A DNA stretch of 50,339 nucleotides from Octopus sinensis (taxonomy: Eukaryota), in contig NW_021834196.1 of assembly GCF_006345805.1 (NCBI RefSeq), positions 1 through 50,339 on the forward strand. The letters are read 5' to 3'. Both the position numbers and the translations under genes were made by a program. Below are positions 11,476-46,753 of the stretch, piece after piece (positions within the stretch are counted from its first letter, which is position 1; every line of letters starts with the position of its first letter). Under the pieces are notes generated by a model. It saw nothing but the letters and a program-made list of their open reading frames with translations. It did not search any database and was not told the DNA's origin.

Positions 11476-11564
11476 ACGCACATAACAAAACAATAGAGTA
11501 CATAATAAATAATTGAATTATTACATATATTATAGATTTATATAAATTTCAAATTTTTGAACAA

Positions 11565-11728
11565 GGCGTAGGAGTGGCTGTGTGGTAAGTAGCTTGCTTA
11601 CCAACTACATGGTTCTGGGTTCAGTCCCACTGCGTGGCACCTTGGGCAAGTGTCTTCCACTATAGCCACGGGCCAACCAAAGCCTTGTGAGTGGATATGG
11701 TAGACGGAAATTGAAAGAAGCCCGTCGT
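11565..11728 (+). mobile_element. SINE family A 5' half (interrupted)
   Basis: Head to GAAAGAAGCCCGTCG then (TA)n; 3' half resumes near 15590. Confidence 0.85.
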
Positions 11729-12037
11729 ATATATATATATATATATATATATACTTTCAACAATTGAGGGCAAAATTAATTAATTATTAATCAATTTCAC
11801 CAAGTGTTCAGTATGCAAAGGGACCATTCAAGGCGAATTCAAATTATTACATTATATAAAAGGGCTTAGTAAAATAATTACTTTGCCGCATACTGAACTC
11901 ATTAGAAATAGCAGCTAAAAAACTTTTTTAAAGCTATTTCTAATACTTAAAGGAAATCTCTCTCATATATAGTTTTTGCTTATTCAACTCAAAAGTTTGG
12001 GGGTAAGGACATCGAAAAATCAAATGCTAAGGTTATT

Positions 12038-12089
12038 TGAGAACGTACGTTTCAAGATTAGTCAAAACAACACTTCTATCATCATCTCA
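12038..12089 (-). ncRNA. Hammerhead-like motif, unit 1 (core C3A)
   Basis: Minus: TGAG-ATGATGA-..-GAAA-CGTACG-T-T-CTCA. Confidence 0.45.
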
Positions 12090-12577
12090 GAAATTCCTTG
12101 TTTGGATTTGGAAACACTGAAAATAAGAACATACCTTTCGAAGATCTGCTCGTAACTAACAGTGCAACAAATTCAAATAAGCAAGCGAAGAATCTCTGTT
12201 CTCCCCTTTCCACCAGCGTGGGGTAAAATCATCAAACACTATGCTTATTTCGGTAAAATCCGAAGCATTAATCAGAGGGAGATTAATTATAATTTCAACA
12301 ATTGAGGGCAAAATTAATTAATTATAATCAATTTCACCAAGTGTTCAGTATGCAAAGGGACCATTCAAGGCGAATTCAAATTATTACATTATATAAAAGG
12401 GCTTATTAAAATAAATTACTTTGCCGCATACTGAACTCATTAGAAATAGCAGCTAAAAAACTTTTTTAAAGCTATTTCTAATACTTAAGGAAATCTCTCT
12501 CATATATAGTGTTTGCTTAATTCAACTCACAAAAGTTTGGGGGTAAGGACATCGAAAAATCAAATGCTAAGGTTATT

Positions 12578-12629
12578 TGAGAACGTACGTTTCAAGATTA
12601 GTCAAAACAACACTTCTATCATCAGCTCA
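12578..12629 (-). ncRNA. Minimal type I hammerhead-like motif, unit 2
   Basis: Minus: TGAG-CTGATGA-tagaagt..actaatctt-GAAA-CGTACG-T-T-CTCA; palindrome ACGTACGT; helix II imperfect. Confidence 0.6.
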
Positions 12630-13153
12630 GAAATTCCTTGGTTTGGATTTGGAAACACTGAAAATAAGAACATACCCTTCGAAGATCTGCTCGTAACAAC
12701 AGTGCCAACAAATTCAAATAAGCAAGCGAAGAATCTCTGTTCTCCCCTTTCCCCAGCGTGGGTAAAATCATCAAACACTATGCTTATTTCGGTAAAATCC
12801 GAAGCATTAATCAGATGCGGCAAAGTAATTTATTTTACTAAGCCCTTTTATATAATGTAATAATTTGAATTCGCCTTGAAGGTCCCTTTGCATACTGAAC
12901 ACTTGGTGAAATTGATTAATAATTAATTAATTTTGCCCTCAATTGTTGAAATTATAATTAATCTCCCTCTGATTAATGCTTCGGATTTTACCGAAATAAG
13001 CATAGTGTTGATGATTTTAACCCACGCTGGTGGAAAGGGGAGAACAGAGATTCTTCGCTTGCTTATTTGAATTTGTTGGCACTGTTAGTACGAGAGATCT
13101 TCGAAAGGGTATGTTCTTATTTTCAGTGTTTCAAATCCAAACCAAGGAATTTC

Positions 13154-13205
13154 TGAGCTGATGATAGAAGTGTTGTTTTGACTAATCTTGAAACGTACGT
13201 TCTCA
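13154..13205 (+). ncRNA. Minimal type I hammerhead-like motif, inverted copy
   Basis: TGAG-CTGATGA(13158-64)..GAAA(13190-93)-CGTACG-T-T-CTCA. Confidence 0.6.
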
Positions 13206-13397
13206 AATAACCTTAGCATTTGATTTTTCGATGTCCTTACCCCCAAACTTTTGTGAGTTGAATTAAGCAAACACTATATATGAGAGAGATTTCCTTTTAA
13301 GTATTAGAAATAGCTTTAAAAAAGTTTTTTAGCTGCTATTTCTAATGAGTTCAGTATGCGGCAAAGTAATTTATTTTACTAAGCCCTTTTATATAAT

Positions 13398-13499
13398 ATA
13401 TATATATATATATAAATTCATAATGAGGGTGAAAAATTAGATATTAATTTAAAATACCGTCAGTTTAACACCAAGTGGCCTAGCACATATGTGTGTGTG

Positions 13500-15810: not shown

Positions 15811-17147
15811 TCAGCAATTTTGGGAAAGGTTAAGTCATTGCATTGACCACAGTGCTCAGCTAGCAACCCCAAAAGATGAAAGGCAAAGACTACCCCAGAA
15901 GAATTTGAACTCAGACTGTAAAGACAGACTCAACGCCGCCAAGCAGTTCACTCGGTGTGCTAACGATTCCGCTGGCTCACGGCCCTATTGTTACGTAGTG
16001 CGCTTGTTTCTACGGTTATTACAATGTAATATATATACAACTCAAAATTTAAAAATTATTCTTTCCCAGCAGTCCGGTGATTGAGAACCCCTGTTTCACA
16101 CTATTCGTTCTTCTACCCAAATGCTTTGAAAATGGATTAATTTCAAACATAAATCCAAGACTACAGTTTTTATAAATCAAAGACTACAATTTATATAAAG
16201 ACGCCAATGATAAAGAAGACAGAAGTAAATGAGGAAAGGCTTTTAATTGTTTTTTGATTCGAGGCCAACCCAATTCGAGCAGGCCCATAAAGAAAAGTAC
16301 TCCATTCGTGATTATTTCATTTATTTTCTATGTTCAAGGAATCCAAGACGACATTATCCTGTGTGTATTTTTTTAAGCTTGCAAGATGTGATTTTAGGAA
16401 GGCTGTAGTGTGTGATTTTTAGTAGGTCGAGTAATCTCGCAGAGGTACGGTCGCCAGCTTGAAGACTTTCAGAAATCAAAAAATCTACTAAGTTTAGCAT
16501 CCAGTACCTTGATCCCTAACGTAACCACAAAGCTTCATGTTTTAAAAAGAGGACAAAGAAATACTTATTACGTGAACAAGACCAAAATTTTGGAAGAGAG
16601 AGCAATCAATTATATATCTACGTCAGTACATGACTGGTAGTTGTTTTATCAATCTCGGAAAGATGAAATGTAAGGCCAACATTAGCGGTATTTGAAGTCA
16701 GAAATGAAATAGACAAATGCTAAAAGGCATTTAATCCGCTGATACTGTTGACACCTTTACAACAACAGTAATAATTGTAATCCTTTTTACAATAAGCGGA
16801 AAAACTGAAAGGTTTGGGGAATGTGCAGCTGATTACATCGGTCCCAGTGTGCAACTGGTACTTATTTCATCGGCCACAAAATGAGGAAAGGCAAAATTGA
16901 CCTCGGCAGAATCTTTACTCAAAATTTAAAGACGGATGAAATACCCTTTTCTACGCTAGACACAAGGCCCGAACTTTAGGGGGAGGGGTCCAGTCGATTA
17001 CATCGACCCCAGTACGCAACTGGTACTTAATTTATCGACCCCGAAAGGAAGAAAGGCAAAGTCGATCTCGGTGGAATTTGAACTCGGACCGTAAAGACAG
17101 ACGAAATACCGCTAAGCATTTAGTCTCGCGTGCTAATGATTCTGCAC
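15811..17147 (-). mobile_element. Cluster of four SINE family D copies (about 15811-15985, 16575-16745, 16795-16935, 16945-17147)
   Basis: Repeated AGTCGATTACATCGACCCCAGT..ACTGGTACTTA..AAAGGCAAAGTCGA..TTTGAACTC..CTAAGCATTT motifs. Confidence 0.75.
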
Positions 17148-24814: not shown

Positions 24815-25010
24815 TGAGGCAGTGAGCTGGCTGACTTATTAACAAATCGGACAAAATAGTTTGCGACATTTCTTCCGTCTTTTTCGTTCTAAGTTCAAAT
24901 GACACCAAATGTCTTTCATCTTTTCCAGGTCGATAAAATAAATACCATTTTAGGCACTGGGGCCAATGTAACCGACTATTGCCGTCCATTCGAAATTGCT
25001 GCCCTTGTAA
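24815..25010 (+). mobile_element. SINE family D, degenerate
   Basis: GGCAGTGAGCTGGC head..CGTTCTAAGTTCAAAT..GGTCGATAAAATAAATACCA..CACTGGGG. Confidence 0.65.
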
Positions 25011-25292
25011 CGCTATTTGAAGCCAATATTTCTTTCTCGTATAATGATTTGTTTTAAATGCTGGTACGGACACCATATTTCATTTTGGAACCATAATATA
25101 CTACCAAGTATATTAAAAGTTTGTAAGTCAATACTGTGTGATACCTTTGTGTTAGCAGTGCGTTGCTTTCATTTCTAAGTTTATGTCTACAGCTTATCAA
25201 TAGAATTCAGAGCCTGCACTGAAAATTATCACATTTCGTATACGAATACGTCTACGTAAACAATGCGATCAAACATAGAAAAGTAGCTAATG

Positions 25293-25337
25293 GGTGTATA
25301 TGCATATTTCAGGAATTATTGCTCCTTCTTCAGCACC
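25293..25337 (-). ncRNA. Minimal type I hammerhead, canonical core
   Basis: Minus: GGTG-CTGAAGA-AGGAG caataa TTCCT-GAAA-TATGCATA-T-A-CACC; palindrome ATATGCATAT. Confidence 0.7.
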
Positions 25338-25691
25338 ACATCCAACTCATTAACCATCCACAAAAACATTGCTTGAATAACCACTAAGTTTAGCGGTGTA
25401 GCATTACTGGACAGAGAAATTTACATTACATATTGCTGGTTGGGACAATTAATAACGATAAATTTTAAAATGAAAACAACGCAATGATAGTACAAATGAA
25501 GGACACAATATTACTCAAAAACTTTTATAATATACTTGATAGTATATTATGATTGCAAAACGAGGTACGGTGTCCTTACCATCCAAATGATATGTACATA
25601 CAAGTTGCCAGGTCTATCTAATCAAGTTACACCGCTAAACTTTAGTGGTTATATAAGCTATGTGTTCGTGGATCGTTATTCGGTTGGATGT

Positions 25692-25736
25692 GACGCCGAA
25701 GAAGGAGCAATGATTCCCGAAATATGCATATACACG
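25692..25736 (+). ncRNA. Decayed partner hammerhead (U4C)
   Basis: CCGAAGA-AGGAG caatga TTCCC-GAAA-TATGCATA-T-A-CAC. Confidence 0.5.
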
Positions 25737-26777
25737 CAAATACACCTATTTTTCTATCTTCGAACGCAGTGTTTCAGCAGACGTATTCATATATGAAATG
25801 TGGTTACCTTCAATGCTGATTCTAAATTTTATTGATAATTTGTTGAGATAAACTTAAAAAAATAATTTCTTTATACCCCAACACTATTCAAGTTCTACTG
25901 CCGAGTTTGACTTTACATTTTTTCTTTTCTGTGCTGATTGAAAAAGAAAAATATATTACTCGTGAAATTGCGGGATCAATCTGTTAATTCTTCTATACAG
26001 AACTTCTCCAACATTTGTCCTCTTTACTGGTCAGGCGTCTTTGTTACGTAATTATTCCGCGACCTTCCAAATTAAGTTCCTCATCGAGGAAGGCAACACA
26101 TTCCAACATGTTTCATGACTTGTAAAGCTGAAGTTAAAAGCATTTAAGCTATTTGGTAGCTTTCTCTTTTTAAAAAGCAAACGTAAAGTGAGATACACTG
26201 AAGTACAGCTCACGTTATAGGTAGGGCCCGTCATCATGAAATGACATATTTATTTCTTCCTCTTGAAGTACGTCTACGGACCCCCACCTTTTGCTCGTAA
26301 ATAATTTAACTTGTGCTAATATTTACACCAATTTGTTCCTTACATTTTAGTAATTATCTTTCGTGAATGAAATATCTTACCTAAAGAGAAAAAAAAAAGA
26401 AAAAAAAAAGAAAAAAAGGAAACCGATTGAAATTCCCTTTCCTAACTAACCCACATTTAACTTGGCTATTTTATAAAGAATCCAGTTGAACTGCTGCAAC
26501 ACTCGTATCCAGTCGACAAACAAAAGAGATTCTGTTTTAGTAATCGGCATTCTTTGACACTGAAAATACTTAATGGGGGGTTGGTAAATTGGTTGGTTAC
26601 TAACAATGAAAAAATGCGATCTCACTTTCTGTATTGTACACCCGCTGTGTCACACGATACACATCCTTACCTCCACACAAACATATACACGCATTTGTGC
26701 GTGTATGTCTTTCTCCACCACCCTCTCTCTGATAGACACACACACACACACACACATAAATATATCTGCGTACACAC

Positions 26778-29483: not shown

Positions 29484-30010
29484 TTATGAATACTTTGTAA
29501 TATACTCCTCCAGCTGTTTATGGCAAGCCAAGATCATCTCACTCAGGGTGTGATAGGACATTGACGTCTTGCTGGGGTTCAGCGTCTTGATCAGGCCGAC
29601 CAAAGTGGGTGACTCCACTACATGCAGCAGTAGCATGTTGTCGACAAACAGGTTTACAATCCTTCTATCCACCATAAACTGATGGACGCCAGTGCCACCA
29701 GTTTCCGTAAATGCCTCGCCAATGCTGAGCTAACGTGCTTTCTTTGTACATGGCTGCGACGACTGACTACTGGCACTGCTATCTACAAGATTGTATTTTC
29801 CTCGAGAAGAGCCGGCCTTGATTCTCTCCTCAAACTGGATGGCATGCGCTGGGTGTTTCCGCTTGACATGCGACTTCAAGTTGTAGAGGCTCGCAGCTTG
29901 TTCTTTGATGGTGGCCTCCTTGGGCCTCACACGATGCATCGGAAGCACAGGATTTTGGTGTTAGTCTTATCCCTTCCAAAATACAGAATTTCCTCAACAA
30001 CGCCAAGAGT
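29484..30010 (-). pseudogene. hAT (Tol2-like) transposase N-terminus: BED finger and following region, frameshifted
   Basis: RCIV(C)RPKEATIKEQAASLYNLKSHVKRKHP (BED finger) and VDRRIVNLFVDNMLLLHVVESPTLVGLIKTLNPSKTSMSYHTL, aligning by memory with Tol2 CVLCLP..NLRKHIERMHP and ILRYIIQGLHPFSTVDLPSFKELISTLQPG. Confidence 0.85.
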
Positions 30011-30685: not shown

Positions 30686-31068
30686 CTCTTTTACTTCTTT
30701 CAGTCATTTGACTGCGGCCATGCTGGAGCACCGCCTTTAATCGAGCAACTCGACCCCGGGACTTATTCTTTTGTAAGCCCAGTACTTATTCTATCGGTCC
30801 CTTTTGCCGAACCGCTAAGTAACGGGGGACATAAACACACCAGCATCGGTTGTCAAGCAATGCTAGGGGGACAAACACAGACACGCATATATATATACAT
30901 ATATACGACGGGCTTCTTTCAGTTTCCGTCTACCAAATCCACTCACAAGGCTTTGGTCGGCCCGAGGCTATAGTGGAAGACACTTGTCCAAGGTGCCACG
31001 CAGTGGGACTGAACCCGGAACCATGTGGTTGGTAAACAAGCTACTTACAACACAGACACTCTGGCGCC
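30686..31068 (-). mobile_element. SINE family A, full length
   Basis: Reverse complement of 1174 copy. Confidence 0.9.
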
Positions 31069-31979: not shown

Positions 31980-32341
31980 AAATCAAATTGCGATAAAATA
32001 AAAATAATTATAATCGCTGGTATTACTAACACAAGCCATATATTTTTCATTATCAGTACATTGAGGCGAAATATTTGCTAGGAATACAGAAGCTTGATAA
32101 ATTAAGTGAAATGAAGATAAAAACATTTACTAAACCGGTAATTCTCAGACTGCAGTTTCTTTCTTTTCATCAATAAAGATAATTTATTTGCTCAGGGAGA
32201 ATTCTTCAGTGAGACCCTGTTTTTCTGGGATCCTAACTCACTAGAAGCATGTGCTTCTAATGATTTACTCTCCCTAACTAATCATATCACTGCGCAGACT
32301 CCGAACGTCCCGACAAAACTAGGGAATTCTGGTATATCGCC

Positions 32342-32483: not shown

Positions 32484-32880
32484 GGGAGGAGTGGCTGTGA
32501 GGTAAGTAGCTTGTTTACCAACCACAGGGTTCCGGGTTCAGTCCCACTGTGTGGCATCTTGGGCAAGTGTCTTCTACTATAGCCTCGGGCCGACCAAAGC
32601 ATTGTGAGTGGATTTGGTAGACGGAAACTGAAAGAATATATATATATATATATATGCGTGTGTGCGTTTGTATGTCTGTGTTTGTCCCCTAGCATTGCTT
32701 GACAGCCGATGCTGGTGTGTTTATGTCCCCGTTACTTAGCGGTTCGGCAAAAGAGTACGATAGAATAAGTACTGGGCTTACAAAAAATAAGTCCCGGGGT
32801 CGAGTTGATCGAGTAAAGGCGGTGCTCCAGCATGGCCGCAGTCAAATGACTTAAACAAGTAAAAGAGTAAAGAAAGAGTA
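32484..32880 (+). mobile_element. SINE family A, full length
   Basis: Head, body and tail as 1174. Confidence 0.9.
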
Positions 32881-34960: not shown

Positions 34961-35130
34961 TATATATATATATATTCATATAAGAAGGATGACCACTAAG
35001 TGGACATCCATATTCTGGAAGTCAACCCCCTATGGTCTTACCACTAAGAAAGGAATGTTCTCAAGAAAATTTAGCAAACGCCAGAACGTAAGCGAGCAAG
35101 AGAAATGAAAATATACAAAATATACAGATT

Positions 35131-35191
35131 AATCACAAACTAGTTTCGTTGTTACCACTTACGTAGATGTCCGCAACTCGTCAGTGTGATC
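35131..35191 (-). ncRNA. Minimal type I hammerhead, canonical core
   Basis: Minus: GATCACA-CTGACGA-GTTG (22 nt) CAAC-GAAA-CTAG-T-T-TGTGATT; 6 bp + GU helix I, G10.1-C11.1, palindrome ACTAGT. Confidence 0.8.
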
Positions 35192-35814
35192 GTCATAGCA
35201 AAATATAATTTGCAGAACTATACACGATACGTTCGCATGAGATTGAACATGTATATAGTTCTATCAATTACATTTGGGGTTATATTTCAAAAGTCTTAAT
35301 TTTGGCGCGCCAAAATACCGGAAATAATTCTGCAGAAAATAATTCTCTGCAGTGAATTTCGTCGGTTAGAGAACATAGTTGTTTAAATTTAAATTTGAAA
35401 TAATAATATTCAATTTTTCACCCTTACTATTTTAAATTTTATATATATATATAGTTACGTTAAAATGTCTATGTTCAAATTTGGCCAAAAGAGTTTTTTT
35501 TTCAGTATTTATTTTTGCTTGCAATAACGAGTTCTTTTAGTCAAACTATTGTATGTCCAGCTGCTGTTGTCAACGTGTAGTATAACGGTTTTGCTATGGA
35601 ATGGTACACTTACGACACTTTTGCGTAATAGCAACAATATATATATATATATATATATAAACATATGCATATATATATATATATATGTGTGTCTGTCTTT
35701 GTCTTCCACTACCGCTTGACAACCGGTGGCGGCATGTTTACTAGGCTTTAAAAATAAGTCTTAGGGTCGATTTCGCTGTAGTCAAATGACTAAACAAGTG
35801 GAAAATAAGAGATC

Positions 35815-35960
35815 TGTGACTGTGTGGGAAGTAGCTTGCTTACCAACCACATGGCTCTGGGGTCAGTCCCACTGCGTGGCACCTTAAGTAAATGTCTATA
35901 GCCTCGGGCCGACCAAAGCCTTGTGAATGGATTTCGAGGACGGAACTGAAAGAAACCTGT

Positions 35961-36031
<71 letters not shown>

Positions 36032-36240
36032 TTGTGTGTCTGTATTTGTCACCCCACCATCGCTTGACAACCGATGTTGGTGTGTTTACGTCCCGTAACT
36101 TAGCGGTTCGGCAAAAGTGCACGATAGAATAAGTACTAGGCTTACAAAGAATAAGTCCTGGGATCAATTGTTTCGACTAAAGGCGGTGCTCCAGCTTAGC
36201 CACAGTCAAATGACTGAAACAAATAAAAGAATAAAAGAAT
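35815..36240 (+). mobile_element. SINE family A
   Basis: Near full length with internal (CA)/(TA)/(TG). Confidence 0.88.
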
Positions 36241-39536: not shown

Positions 39537-39565
39537 CGAGAAAGAAGCAACAAGAATGGATTAGT

Positions 39566-39656
39566 TTTTAGTACAATTGTTTCATACAAAGACAGGCTTT
39601 ATTAAAAGTTGCAAATATTGCAGCAGATAAAAGTGTCCCGTACTCATCAGCTAAAA
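39566..39656 (-). ncRNA. Type I hammerhead with canonical core and long helix II insertion
   Basis: Minus: TTTTAG-CTGATGA-GTAC..(52 nt)..GTAT-GAAA-CAATTG-T-A-CTAAAA; palindrome ACAATTGT; inside a ~225-bp module between (TA)n tracts. Confidence 0.78.
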
Positions 39657-39782
39657 CACATATGAGTTCTCCAAACATCTTAGTGGGTGAGGCTATATCA
39701 TGAAGTATTGGAGATAGATTTTCATAAAAGCAGATTTGAATCTTAATTGCTTTTATTGTATATATATATATATATATTATAT

Positions 39783-40868: not shown

Positions 40869-41269
40869 TACTACTCACAAGGAGCTAAACACAGAGGGGA
40901 CAAACAAGGACAGACAAACGGATTAAGTCGATTACATCGACCCCAGTGCGTAACTGGTACTTAATTTATTGACCCCCGAAAGGATGAAAGGCAAAGTCGA
41001 CCTCGGCGGAATTTGAACTCAGAACGTAGCGGCAGACGAAATACTTATCTCTTTACTACCCACAAGGGGCTAAACACAGAGGGGACAAACAAGGACAAAC
41101 AAACGGATTAAGTCGATTATATCGACCCCAGTGTGTACTTAATTTATCAACCCCGAAAGGATGAAAGGCAAAGTCGACCTCGGCGGAATTTGAACTCAGA
41201 ACGTAACGACAGACGAAATACCGCTAAGCATTTCGCCCGGCGTGCTAACGATTCTGCCAGCTCGCCGCC
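40869..41269 (-). mobile_element. Tandem SINE family D dimer
   Basis: Full copy 41046-41269 (head GGCGGCGAGCTGGCAGAATCG) plus 5'-truncated copy 40869-41045. Confidence 0.92.
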
Positions 41270-41289
41270 TCACTGCTAACATTAACAAT

Positions 41290-42764: not shown

Positions 42765-43444
42765 TTTCTATACAGAGTCTGAAATTATATGGGAGGAAGT
42801 GAGTCGATTTGTAACCTCAGTACTCAACTGGTACTTATTTCAACGACCCAAATGATGAAAGGCGAAGTCGACCTCAGTGGCATTTGAACTCAGAATGTAA
42901 TGACAGAGAAAAATGCCGCTAAGCATTTTGCCCGGAGCACAACCATTTCTGCCAATTCGTCGCCTTGCAGAGTTCAAATTTCGACTAGCAGTTTCGTGGG
43001 AAGTGAAAAGTCGATTAAACAGATCCTAATAGTCAGCTGGTACTTATTTTGTTAACCCCGCAAAAGGATGAACGGCAAAGTCGATTTTTGCAGTATTTGA
43101 ACGTAGAGCGTAAAGACACACGTAATGCTGCTAAGCATTTTGTCCGGCGTAGTAACTATTCTAAGCACTTTGTCCGGCGTAGTAACTATTCTGCTAGCGT
43201 GCCGCCTTACTACTGACATTGTTAATCCTTTCTACTACAGGCACGGGTCCTGAAATTTCGGTGGAAGGGTTAAGTCAATAACATCGATTTCCAGCACCCT
43301 ACTACTGGTACTTAATTTATCGACCCCGAATGGATGAAAGGCAAAGTCGTCGTCGGTGAAATTTGAACTCAGAACGAAGCGACGGGCGAAATACTGCTAA
43401 GCATTTCGTCGAGCGTGCTAACGATTCTGCCAGCTCGTCGCCTT
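42765..43444 (-). mobile_element. Three tandem SINE family D copies
   Basis: About 42765-42968, 42990-43208 (with a local 31-bp duplication at 43131-43192) and 43225-43444. Confidence 0.8.
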
Positions 43445-46504: not shown

Positions 46505-46620
46505 TATTCTTTTCTATTCTAGGCACAAGGCCCGACATTTTTTGGGGAGGAGGGGGGCAGTCGATTAGATCGACCACAGTACACAACTGGTACTTGATTT
46601 ATCGACCGCAAAAGGATGAA
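46505..46620 (-). mobile_element. SINE family D 3' part
   Basis: CTTTTCTATTCTAGGCACAAGGCCCGA..GTCGATTAGATCGACC..ACTGGTACTTGATTTATCGACC. Confidence 0.75.
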
Positions 46621-46621
46621 A

Positions 46622-46753
46622 GGAAAAGCACTGCTTGGAACTGCTCGAATACTCCGGAACGTGCTCGAAAAATATGAGGTGTTACCTTAGTTCACTGGTG
46701 GTGAGCAGCTGATACCGTAGTTACATCTCCAGCGTTAGAAGCTGTGCAAAGGC

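What the first reader, a model, noticed from the sequence alone, without database searches (positions are those of the whole stretch)
25230..25802. Old inverted pair of hammerhead modules masquerading as a MITE
Seen: ~175-bp arms with many substitutions, each with a hammerhead mid-arm pointing outward. The left copy has a canonical CUGAAGA core, a 5-bp helix II and the 10-nt palindrome AUAUGCAUAU; the right copy has U4C. I found no TSD or transposon-type terminus. The divergence between arms means this cannot be a read fold-back artefact. Established: PLE insertions often carry an inverted truncated pseudo-LTR.
Basis: partly seen in the sequence, partly recalled or inferred. Interest (0 to 1): 0.72.

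Follow-up and report, generated by a model that had tools for sequence, protein, structure and literature searches.

The report
Decayed inverted pair of hammerhead-ribozyme repeats
Two old, diverged copies of a ~380-base non-coding repeat lie head-to-head; one still has a complete hammerhead self-cleaving RNA motif, and this is an ordinary relic of the ribozyme-carrying retroelements (Penelope-like elements and "retrozymes") known in many animal genomes.

Summary
The inverted repeat is real but larger and more structured than reported. It spans 25059-25866 and consists of two copies of a 375-390-nt, 33-35% GC, non-coding unit. The copies are 77% identical and joined 5'-end to 5'-end, so their sense strands point outward. 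They are circularly permuted relative to each other, and each is one unit plus about 13 nt of terminal redundancy. That implies a multimeric or circular template and rules out a fixed-end MITE.

The left copy (minus strand, 25345-25285) has a complete type-I hammerhead: CUGAAGA, a 5-bp helix II, GAAA, the palindrome AUAUGCAUAU and cleavage site UA|C. The right copy is broken by five differences, not only U4C.

A strict descriptor expects about 0.001-0.005 such motifs per window. A relaxed descriptor finds six in this window against 0.05 expected. One of these loci, at 11755-13400, is a young (97%) tandem-plus-inverted complex of a 538-nt hammerhead unit inserted into (TA)n.

No other copy of this family could be fetched, Rfam does not score the motif, and three key U residues sit at CpG/TpG-variable sites.

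Verdict: a relic of a known kind (non-LTR retrozyme / Penelope-type insertion). Low novelty.

The parts
25059..25446 (-). Left copy: one 375-nt unit plus 13-nt terminal redundancy. The redundant sequences are TGCTGGTACGGAC at 25059-25071 and TGCTGGTTGGGAC at 25434-25446. The sense strand is the minus strand, with the 5' end at the centre and the 3' end at the left outer border.
   Evidence: the terminal redundancy is read directly from the sequence
25285..25345 (-). Complete type-I hammerhead-like motif. Helix I 5' strand 25345-25334; core CUGAAGA 25333-25327; helix II hairpin 25326-25311; GAAA 25310-25307; helix III palindrome AUAUGCAUAU 25307-25298; A17 at 25297. The predicted cleavage is between 25297 and 25296. 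Helix I 3' strand 25296-25285.
25447..25455 (.). Short spacer between the two 5' ends (head-to-head junction); about 9-14 nt depending on where the copy ends are drawn.
25456..25866 (+). Right copy: one ~390-nt unit plus ~13-14 nt terminal redundancy (GATAAATTTTAAAA at 25457-25470 and GATAAACTTAAAA at 25847-25859). The sense strand is the plus strand. It is circularly permuted relative to the left copy.
25684..25744 (+). Degenerate homologue of the hammerhead: CCGAAGA (U4C) at 25696-25702, an A10.1/C11.1 mismatch, helix I broken by three changes, and the helix III palindrome intact.
25062..25184 (+). Segment A of the left copy. Its inverted partner A' is 25458-25581 (79.2% over 125 nt).
   Evidence: (I3)
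25172..25440 (+). Segment B of the left copy. Its inverted partner B' is 25590-25860 (79.8% over 233 nt by blastn; 78-85% by the repeat finder).
   Evidence: (I1, I2, I4)

Best explanation
The locus is an old, decaying insertion complex of a short non-coding retroelement that carries a type-I hammerhead ribozyme. That makes it a non-LTR 'retrozyme' or Penelope-like-element pseudo-LTR type module.

Shown: two copies of a 375-390-nt, AT-rich unit lie 5'-to-5' with their 3' ends outward. They are circularly permuted relative to each other. Each is one unit plus ~13 nt of terminal redundancy. The left copy retains every element of a hammerhead and the right copy has lost it.

Inferred mechanism: unit RNAs were transcribed from tandem copies and processed by the hammerhead, which acts as a dimer through its palindromic helix III. 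They were probably circularised. They were then reverse-transcribed for slightly more than one turn by a Penelope-like RT/GIY-YIG enzyme supplied in trans. That enzyme can nick and prime on both target strands, which gives two outward-facing copies meeting at their 5' ends.

Since then the copies have diverged by 23% and are almost certainly inert. A single surviving motif with a weak helix III has no partner for dimer cleavage.
For: The inverted pairs A/A' and B/B' lie in the order A-B|A'-B'. After rotation the right copy aligns collinearly with the left at 77% over 383 columns, including across the artificial junction. Terminal redundancies of ~13 nt occur in both copies.

The full hammerhead architecture is present in the left copy. 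A strict descriptor that also recovers 3 of 4 published, experimentally cleaving retrozyme hammerheads expects only 0.001-0.005 hits per window. The core, helix II and helix III form the best-conserved 40-column block between the copies (92% against 77% overall).

The unit size (375-390 nt) and GC content (33-35%) match mollusc retrozymes (350-390 bp, under 45% GC; PMC7229834). Palindromic 6-10-nt helix III sequences are seen in published coral, mussel and axolotl retrozyme hammerheads. The energy of the hammerhead fold relative to the MFE, and the stability of the dimer helix III, fall within the range of those controls.

The window is strongly enriched in such motifs: six hits of a relaxed descriptor against 0.047 expected. 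Three of them score 19-21 bits with Rfam Hammerhead_1, and those three lie in short segments between (TA)n tracts. At 11755-13400 a 538-nt hammerhead unit forms two tandem copies plus an inverted 1.1-unit copy, head-to-head, at 97% identity and inserted in (TA)n. This is the same architecture in a young state.

The literature reports dual hammerheads 100-700 bp apart on opposite strands (PMC4209133). It also reports that PLE insertions form partial tandems with an adjacent inverted 5'-truncated copy (PMC8557442), and that a purified PLE protein cleaves and extends both target strands (PMC11167929).
Against: Only one of the two copies has the motif, and no third copy of this family was found in the window. 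None was found in metagenome, prokaryote-genome or viral collections, nor through translated ORFs. Conservation and covariation of the helices are therefore untested.

Rfam Hammerhead_1 gives no match even at E<=10 on 101 nt. A covariance model built from three published retrozyme hammerheads gives only 6.4 bits. However, the clearly retrozyme-like young family at 13.1 kb is also missed by Rfam.

The 10.1-11.1 pair is A-U rather than the usual G-C. Helix I has only 4 contiguous pairs before a bulge.

U4, U11.1 and U2.2 of the left motif are TG where the right copy has CG. Overall there are 7 such sites against 2 in the opposite direction. If CpG decay produced them, the common ancestor would have had CCGAAGA and would not have been a hammerhead.

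There is no (TA)n at the flanks, no TSD and no PLE ORF anywhere in the window.

Whole-unit folding is not unusually stable (z -0.05 and -1.5). Published retrozymes are similar (z -0.9 to -3.0), so this test is uninformative.
Confidence: 0.65

Rival explanations
1. The 375-390-nt unit is an ordinary tandem or satellite-type (or other retroposed) repeat without ribozyme function. Under this reading the hammerhead-like motif in the left copy arose by chance, partly through CpG-to-TpG decay.
For: Three of the residues that make the left motif canonical (U4, U11.1, U2.2) are TG in the left copy and CG in the right. CG/TG differences are over-represented among transitions: 9 of 43, and 7 of these have CG in the right copy. 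Rfam and the three-sequence model do not recognise the motif. The right copy is not a hammerhead. No further copies are available to show conservation.
Against: The chance expectation for a motif of this quality is ~0.001-0.005 per 50 kb, which is ~1e-4 or less for an 800-nt locus. The window is independently and heavily enriched in hammerhead-like motifs, and one of those loci has the same tandem/inverted architecture. The motif region is the best-conserved block between the copies. A head-to-head arrangement of copies just over one unit long is typical of PLE-type insertion, not of satellite decay.
Confidence: 0.2
2. A MITE or foldback-type DNA transposon with long terminal inverted repeats.
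For: It has long inverted arms (~270 nt), is AT-rich, is non-coding, and has a short interior.
Against: The copies are circularly permuted (A-B|A'-B') rather than mirror-symmetric, so the 'termini' of the two arms are different sequences. There is no TSD above chance and no other copy in the window. 23% arm divergence is unusual for a mobile foldback element.
Confidence: 0.05
3. A local inverted segmental duplication or an assembly artefact, with no mobile-element origin.
For: There are only two copies, they are adjacent, and they are in inverted orientation.
Against: A simple inverted duplication would give A-B|B'-A', and the observed permutation needs an extra rearrangement. 23% divergence with indels excludes a read fold-back or assembly artefact.
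Confidence: 0.03

Closest known systems
Metazoan non-LTR retrozymes (Cervera & de la Pena 2020, PMC7229834; Li, Clavereau & Pollet 2026 preprint, 10.64898/2026.07.22.740005)
   Same: The unit is non-coding and low in GC, and its length (375-390 nt) matches the mussel retrozyme repeats (350-390 bp). It has a type-I hammerhead with a short helix II and a palindromic helix III of the coral/mussel type. The circular permutation plus terminal redundancy points to a multimeric or circular template. Genomic 'monomer' derivatives of such elements are known.
   Different: No tandem array is present at this locus, only two copies of ~1.03 units in inverted orientation. The 10.1-11.1 pair is A-U rather than G-C, and helix I has 4+4 bp with a bulge. 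There is no sequence similarity to the published coral or mussel units. Expression, circularity and cleavage are untested.
Penelope-like element insertions with pseudo-LTRs and an adjacent inverted 5'-truncated copy (Craig et al. 2021, PMC8557442; Cervera & De la Pena 2014, PMC4209133; Frangieh et al. 2024, PMC11167929)
   Same: The two copies are arranged head-to-head with their 3' ends outward, and the hammerhead lies within the repeated module. The locus matches the reported 'dual hammerheads 100-700 bp apart on opposite strands'. There is no clear TSD.
   Different: There is no RT/GIY-YIG ORF between or near the copies. The copies are complete units rather than truncated pLTRs flanking an ORF. 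This locus has no (TA)n target or recognisable 30-40-bp tail. The hammerhead is not of the 'minimal' PLE type: it has a short helix II, no bulged nucleotide after A9, and a full helix III palindrome.
The 538-nt hammerhead unit complex in the same window (11755-13400)
   Same: It has tandem/inverted head-to-head architecture with outward 3' ends and a hammerhead-like motif in each unit. The inverted copy is slightly longer than one unit and out of phase with its partner.
   Different: It is a different sequence family, with no similarity by blastn. It is young (96.6-97% identity against 77%), has two tandem units on one side, and is flanked by (TA)n on both sides.
Newt satellite 2, Schistosoma Sm-alpha and cave-cricket hammerhead satellites (recalled from memory and as cited)
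   Same: These are type-I hammerheads embedded in repeats of a few hundred bp. The hammerhead acts as a dimer through a weak palindromic helix III.
   Different: Those occur in long tandem arrays or SINE-like elements with thousands of copies. Here only two decayed copies are visible.

Membership tests
Hammerhead ribozyme, type I | Conserved core: C3-U4-G5-A6-N7-G8-A9, G12-A13-A14, A15.1-U16.1, and H17 at the cleavage site | tested here: met
   The left copy has CUGAAGA ... GAAA ... U-A|C. The right copy has CCGAAGA, so the feature is not met there.
Hammerhead ribozyme, type I | Three helices around the core, with helix I open and helices II and III capped | tested here: met
   In the left copy, helix I has 4 bp, a 1-nt bulge and 4 more bp. 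Helix II has 5 bp and a 6-nt loop. Helix III has 3 bp with a UGCA loop, or 10 bp as a dimer. The hammerhead fold is -7.8 kcal/mol against an MFE of -14.0, comparable with the active mussel hammerhead at -6.7 against -14.1.
Hammerhead ribozyme, type I | G10.1-C11.1 pair at the base of helix II (highly conserved) | tested here: not met
   The left copy has A10.1-U11.1 and the right copy has A10.1/C11.1. A published active axolotl motif has a U-U mismatch at this position, so the feature is not absolute.
Hammerhead ribozyme, type I | Score at or above the Rfam RF00163 gathering threshold (34 bits) | tested here: not met
   There is no Hammerhead family match in the whole window at gathering thresholds. 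There is none at E<=10 on 1.4 kb or on 101 nt around the motif. Three other motifs in the window reach 19-21 bits. The young 13.1-kb family is also missed.
Hammerhead ribozyme, type I | Compensatory changes in the helices across family members | not testable with these tools
   Only two copies are available, and the second has non-compensated changes. No eukaryotic genome collection can be searched by DNA, and the scans that were possible found nothing.
Hammerhead ribozyme, type I | Site-specific self-cleavage | not testable with these tools
   This needs in vitro transcription of monomer and dimer constructs.
Metazoan non-LTR retrozyme | Short non-coding unit (about 150-450 bp, up to ~970) with low GC | tested here: met
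   The unit is 375-390 nt with 33-35% GC. The only ORFs are spurious, the longest is 98 codons, and there are no Pfam or homologue hits.
Metazoan non-LTR retrozyme | Head-to-tail tandem arrangement with a type-I hammerhead in every unit | tested here: inconclusive
   There is no tandem array at this locus. Each copy is one unit plus ~13 nt, and the copies are circularly permuted, which implies a multimeric or circular template. Only one of the two units has an intact motif.
Metazoan non-LTR retrozyme | Expression as linear and circular RNAs of unit length | not testable with these tools
   No transcriptome data are available here.
Autonomous Penelope-like element | ORF encoding a telomerase-like RT and a GIY-YIG endonuclease | tested here: not met
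   There is no such ORF in or near the locus or among the window's ORFs of 70 codons or more. Ten candidate ORFs gave no Pfam hit.
Autonomous Penelope-like element | Insertion architecture: partial tandems and/or an adjacent inverted copy joined at the 5' ends | tested here: met
   The junction is head-to-head with the sense strands pointing outward. This is as described in PMC8557442.
MITE / foldback DNA transposon | Mirror-symmetric terminal inverted repeats reaching both element ends, flanked by a TSD | tested here: not met
   The order is A-B|A'-B', so the outer ends are non-homologous. The best flank repeat is 8 nt, which is within chance.

The most novel reading that the evidence does not exclude
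The two copies are footprints of a single insertion event. In that event a circular unit-length retrozyme RNA was copied by target-primed reverse transcription from both strands of one double-strand break. Each cDNA would have started at a different point on the circle, run once around, and stopped ~13 nt after meeting its own start. This would explain why both copies are 'one unit + ~13 nt', why they are out of phase, and why they are joined 5'-to-5'. If so, the locus would be direct genomic evidence that circRNA, and not only linear multimers, serves as the template for PLE-type integration.
Probability: 0.15. Interest if true: 0.5.

Novelty: new member of a known kind. Interest (0 to 1): 0.2.

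Why it matters
The locus adds no new principle. It is a textbook-type relic of hammerhead-bearing, Penelope-dependent retroelements. These are already known to occur in thousands of copies in invertebrate and lower-vertebrate genomes, and to form inverted pairs.

Its practical value is for annotation. Such loci look like MITEs or foldback elements to repeat finders, and the permuted A-B|A'-B' order is a simple way to tell them apart.

The window as a whole holds six hammerhead-like motifs, four of them in insertions flanked by (TA)n. That makes the source genome a good place to study how these elements integrate. The 'unit + ~13 nt' copies may bear on the open question of whether circular RNA is the reverse-transcription template.

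Tried and rejected
- **Rfam.** The whole window at gathering thresholds gave nothing. E-value mode on 1.4 kb and on 101-nt stretches around both motifs gave only weak C/D-snoRNA noise (sR30, 15 bits), which I rejected as chance.
- **Translated ORF of the right copy.** The 98-codon ORF searched against 5.8 billion proteins had no candidate.
- **Exact-pattern DNA scans.** A 32-mer covering helix II to helix III found 0 matches in metagenome, prokaryote-genome and viral collections. A relaxed core+helix III pattern in metagenomes gave 18 hits, about the number expected by chance. None had helix II complementarity or similarity to the unit, so all were rejected.
- **Sampling the host genome through TE proteins.** A hAT-like fragment at 29487-29729 found only two short Logan contigs at 50-53% identity. 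This route cannot reach other copies.
- **Pfam on ten ORFs** around the locus and elsewhere: no hit.
- **Whole-unit circular folding z-scores.** The values are unremarkable, but published retrozymes behave the same way, so the test is uninformative.
- **Covariance model from three published retrozyme hammerheads**. It scores the finding's motif at only 6.4 bits, but it led to the 32.2-kb motif. A four-sequence alignment misaligned the GAAA box and was dropped.
- **TSD search:** nothing above chance.
- **Empty-site comparison within the window:** not possible. The left flank joins a dispersed repeat that ends at ~24977, and the right flank is unique.
- **Similarity to published mussel and coral retrozyme units:** none.
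- **tRNA scan:** none.

Full report
**What is at the locus.**
The window is eukaryotic-looking DNA: 36% GC, rich in microsatellites, with dispersed SINE-like repeats and no long ORFs. Around the reported coordinates there are two inverted pairs, not one. Segment B (25172-25440) pairs with 25590-25860, at 79.8% over 233 nt by blastn and 78-85% by the repeat finder. Segment A (25062-25184) pairs with 25458-25581, at 79.2%.

On the + strand the order is A-B, a short spacer, then A'-B'. A mirror-image inverted repeat would read A-B|B'-A'. I then rotated the right copy, taking its B part first and its A part second. In that order it aligns collinearly with the contiguous left copy at 77% identity over 383 columns, and the identity stays high across the artificial joint. 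The two copies are therefore circular permutations of one unit, 375 nt on the left and about 390 nt on the right.

Each copy carries a short terminal redundancy. On the left it is TGCTGGTACGGAC (25059-25071) and TGCTGGTTGGGAC (25434-25446). On the right it is GATAAATTTTAAAA (from 25457) and GATAAACTTAAAA (from 25847). Each copy is thus one unit plus about 13 nt. The full structure spans 25059-25866, and only about 9-14 nt lie between the copies.

**Orientation.**
Taking the hammerhead strand as sense, the left copy is on the minus strand and the right copy on the plus strand. Their 5' ends meet in the middle and their 3' ends face outward.

**The motif.**
On the minus strand the left copy reads UUGGAUGUGGUG CUGAAGA AGGAG-CAAUAA-UUCCU GAAA UAUGCAUAU A|CACCCAUUAGC. 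Its elements are:
- the core boxes CUGANGA and GAAA;
- a 5-bp helix II with a 6-nt loop;
- helix III, starting with A15.1-U16.1 and forming the 10-nt palindrome AUAUGCAUAU (3 bp plus a UGCA loop as a monomer, 10 bp as a dimer);
- A17 at the cleavage site;
- helix I of 4 bp, a one-base bulge, then 4 more bp.

The right copy differs at five structurally relevant positions. It has U4C. It has U11.1C, which gives an A/C mismatch at the base of helix II. Three further changes break helix I, and none of them is compensated.

**Is it more than chance?**
I wrote a strict descriptor: core, helix II of at least 4 bp, helix III of at least 3 pairs with a palindrome allowed, H17, and helix I of at least 4 bp. 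It recovers 3 of 4 published retrozyme hammerheads; the fourth has a U-U mismatch at the base of helix II. It expects 0.001-0.005 hits per 50-kb window in composition-matched random sequence. The window has two hits, this one and 35184(-).

A relaxed descriptor allows any helix II spacer of 8-60 nt. It gives six hits against 0.047 expected, and no random window out of 600 had more than one. The hits are at 12625(-), 13158(+), 25333(-), 32209(-), 35184(-) and 39650(-).

Three of these score 19-21 bits with Rfam Hammerhead_1, below the 34-bit gathering score. Those three lie in short segments bounded on both sides by (TA)n tracts. The source genome is therefore rich in hammerhead-bearing insertions. 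That raises the prior that the motif in the finding is real rather than accidental.

**A young analogue in the same window.**
At 11755-13400 a 538-nt unit forms two tandem copies on the minus strand (11750-12276 and 12288-12815, 97% identical). An inverted copy of 1.1 units follows on the plus strand (12811-13400, 96.6% identical to 11848-12434). The two blocks are joined 5'-to-5', and the whole complex lies between (TA)n tracts. Identical hammerhead-like motifs sit at 12590-12640(-) and 13145-13205(+), and the first tandem unit has a C3-to-A change. This is the same architecture as the finding, in a different sequence family and much younger. Rfam misses that family's motif too. Rfam's silence on the finding's motif is therefore weak evidence against it.

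**Comparison with what is known.**
Cervera and De la Pena (2014) described hammerheads in the pseudo-LTRs of Penelope-like elements. They noted 'dual' motifs 100-700 bp apart on opposite strands, and a palindromic helix III that implies action as a dimer. Craig et al. (2021) describe PLE insertions as 5'-truncated partial tandems, often with an inverted 5'-truncated copy adjacent at the 5' end. They also report a bias for microsatellite targets and TSDs that are hard to discern. Frangieh et al. (2024) showed that a purified PLE protein nicks and extends both target strands, which would produce two outward-facing copies.

Cervera and de la Pena (2020) defined metazoan non-LTR retrozymes as non-coding, low-GC tandem units of about 170-400 nt with type-I hammerheads, expressed as circular RNAs. 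In the mussel the units are 350-390 bp. The published coral, mussel and axolotl hammerheads have 6-10-nt palindromic helix III sequences like the one here. A 2026 preprint links these retrozymes phylogenetically to PLE pseudo-LTRs and reports dispersed monomeric derivatives.

The unit here matches on several counts: it is 375-390 nt, 33-35% GC and non-coding. The energy of its hammerhead fold relative to the MFE (-7.8 against -14.0 kcal/mol) is close to the active mussel motif (-6.7 against -14.1). Its dimer helix III (-9.5 kcal/mol) lies within the published range of -4.6 to -13.4.

**Evidence against.**
- Only two copies exist in the window, and I could not retrieve others. The DNA collections available hold no eukaryotic genomes and the protein route failed. 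Conservation and covariation across the family are therefore untested.
- The 10.1-11.1 pair is A-U rather than G-C.
- A covariance model built from three published retrozyme hammerheads gives only 6.4 bits.
- U4, U11.1 and U2.2 of the left motif are TG where the right copy has CG. Across the unit there are 7 such sites against 2 in the reverse direction, and CG/TG sites make up 9 of 43 transitions. If these reflect CpG decay in the left copy, the common ancestor would have had CCGAAGA and would not have been a ribozyme. The window's CpG observed/expected ratio of 0.88 indicates only mild CpG loss. The two copies may also descend from different RNA variants. The caveat stands until an outgroup copy is available.
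- Whole-unit folding is not unusually stable (z -0.05 and -1.5). Published retrozymes score similarly (z -0.9, -1.2 and -3.0), so this test does not discriminate.
- No TSD, no (TA)n and no PLE ORF accompany this locus.

**Rivals.**
A MITE or foldback element is excluded by the permuted order, the non-homologous outer ends and the lack of a TSD. A simple inverted duplication would not give the permutation, and an assembly fold-back is excluded by 23% divergence with indels. The serious rival is a non-ribozyme tandem-derived repeat with a fortuitous motif, to which I give about 0.2.

**Verdict.**
This is not a PLE with an inverted truncated pseudo-LTR. It is two permuted copies, each slightly longer than one unit, of a non-coding hammerhead-bearing unit. 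The class is known (non-LTR retrozyme / PLE pseudo-LTR module), and the copies are long dead. It counts as a new member of a known kind and is of low interest.

The most novel reading still allowed is that the two 'unit + ~13 nt' copies record one round of reverse transcription on a circular RNA, primed from both strands of a single break. I give that about 0.15.

The organism was not identified. The repeat landscape recalls coleoid cephalopod genomes, in which Penelope-like elements are annotated, but this rests on memory and was not tested.

Noticed in passing
window 11755-13400: Young complex of a 538-nt hammerhead-bearing unit. Two tandem copies lie on the minus strand (97% identical), joined 5'-to-5' to an inverted 1.1-unit copy (96.6%). 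The whole complex is inserted between (TA)n tracts next to a SINE-like repeat. Identical CUGAUGA...GAAA-CGUACGU motifs are at 12590-12640(-) and 13145-13205(+), and the first tandem unit has C3->A. Both 3' junctions fall at TA-rich sites of the unit, which suggests microhomology priming on the (TA)n target.
   Followed up: partly
window 31986-32340 (motif 32142-32215, minus strand): A ~355-nt segment between two (TA)n tracts carries a hammerhead-like motif: CUGAAGA, a 43-nt helix II region, GAAA, the palindrome ACUGCAGU and C|UGAGA. It scores 21.2 bits with Rfam Hammerhead_1 (gathering score 34) and 15.6 bits with my three-sequence model. It is single-copy in the window.
   Followed up: partly
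window 34983-35440 (motif 35132-35190, minus strand): A ~457-nt segment between (TA)n tracts carries the most canonical motif of the window: helix I of 6-7 bp, CUGACGA, G10.1-C11.1, the palindrome ACUAGU and U|UGUGAU. It scores 20.9 bits with Rfam Hammerhead_1 and passes the strict descriptor.
   Followed up: partly
window 39537-39756 (motif 39566-39656, minus strand): A ~220-nt segment between (TA)n tracts carries a hammerhead-like motif: CUGAUGA, a 60-nt helix II region, the palindrome ACAAUUGU and a 6-bp helix I. It scores 19.4 bits with Rfam Hammerhead_1.
   Followed up: partly
window 29487-29960, minus strand: A hAT/BED-like transposase N-terminal fragment is interrupted by an in-frame stop at 29730-29732. 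There is no Pfam hit. The only homologues are two short Logan contigs at 50-53% identity (sample SRR18067345).
   Followed up: partly
window 25376-25401 and 25630-25650: A second well-conserved block of the unit, CACCGCUAAAC(U)UUAGUGG, forms a 7-bp hairpin in both copies. Its role is unknown.
   Followed up: no
window 24815-24977; also about 16992-17125, 40926-41272, 42823-43436, 46559-46622: A dispersed repeat family (67-80% identity) ends about 80 nt to the left of the finding. Other SINE-like copies with (TA)n or (CA)n tails recur across the window, for example 11560-11726, 30867-31060, 32540-32731 and 35793-36176.
   Followed up: no
whole window: All four single hammerhead-like motifs (25333, 32209, 35184, 39650) are on the minus strand. 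Only the 12.6/13.2-kb inverted pair contributes a plus-strand motif. This may be coincidence.
   Followed up: no
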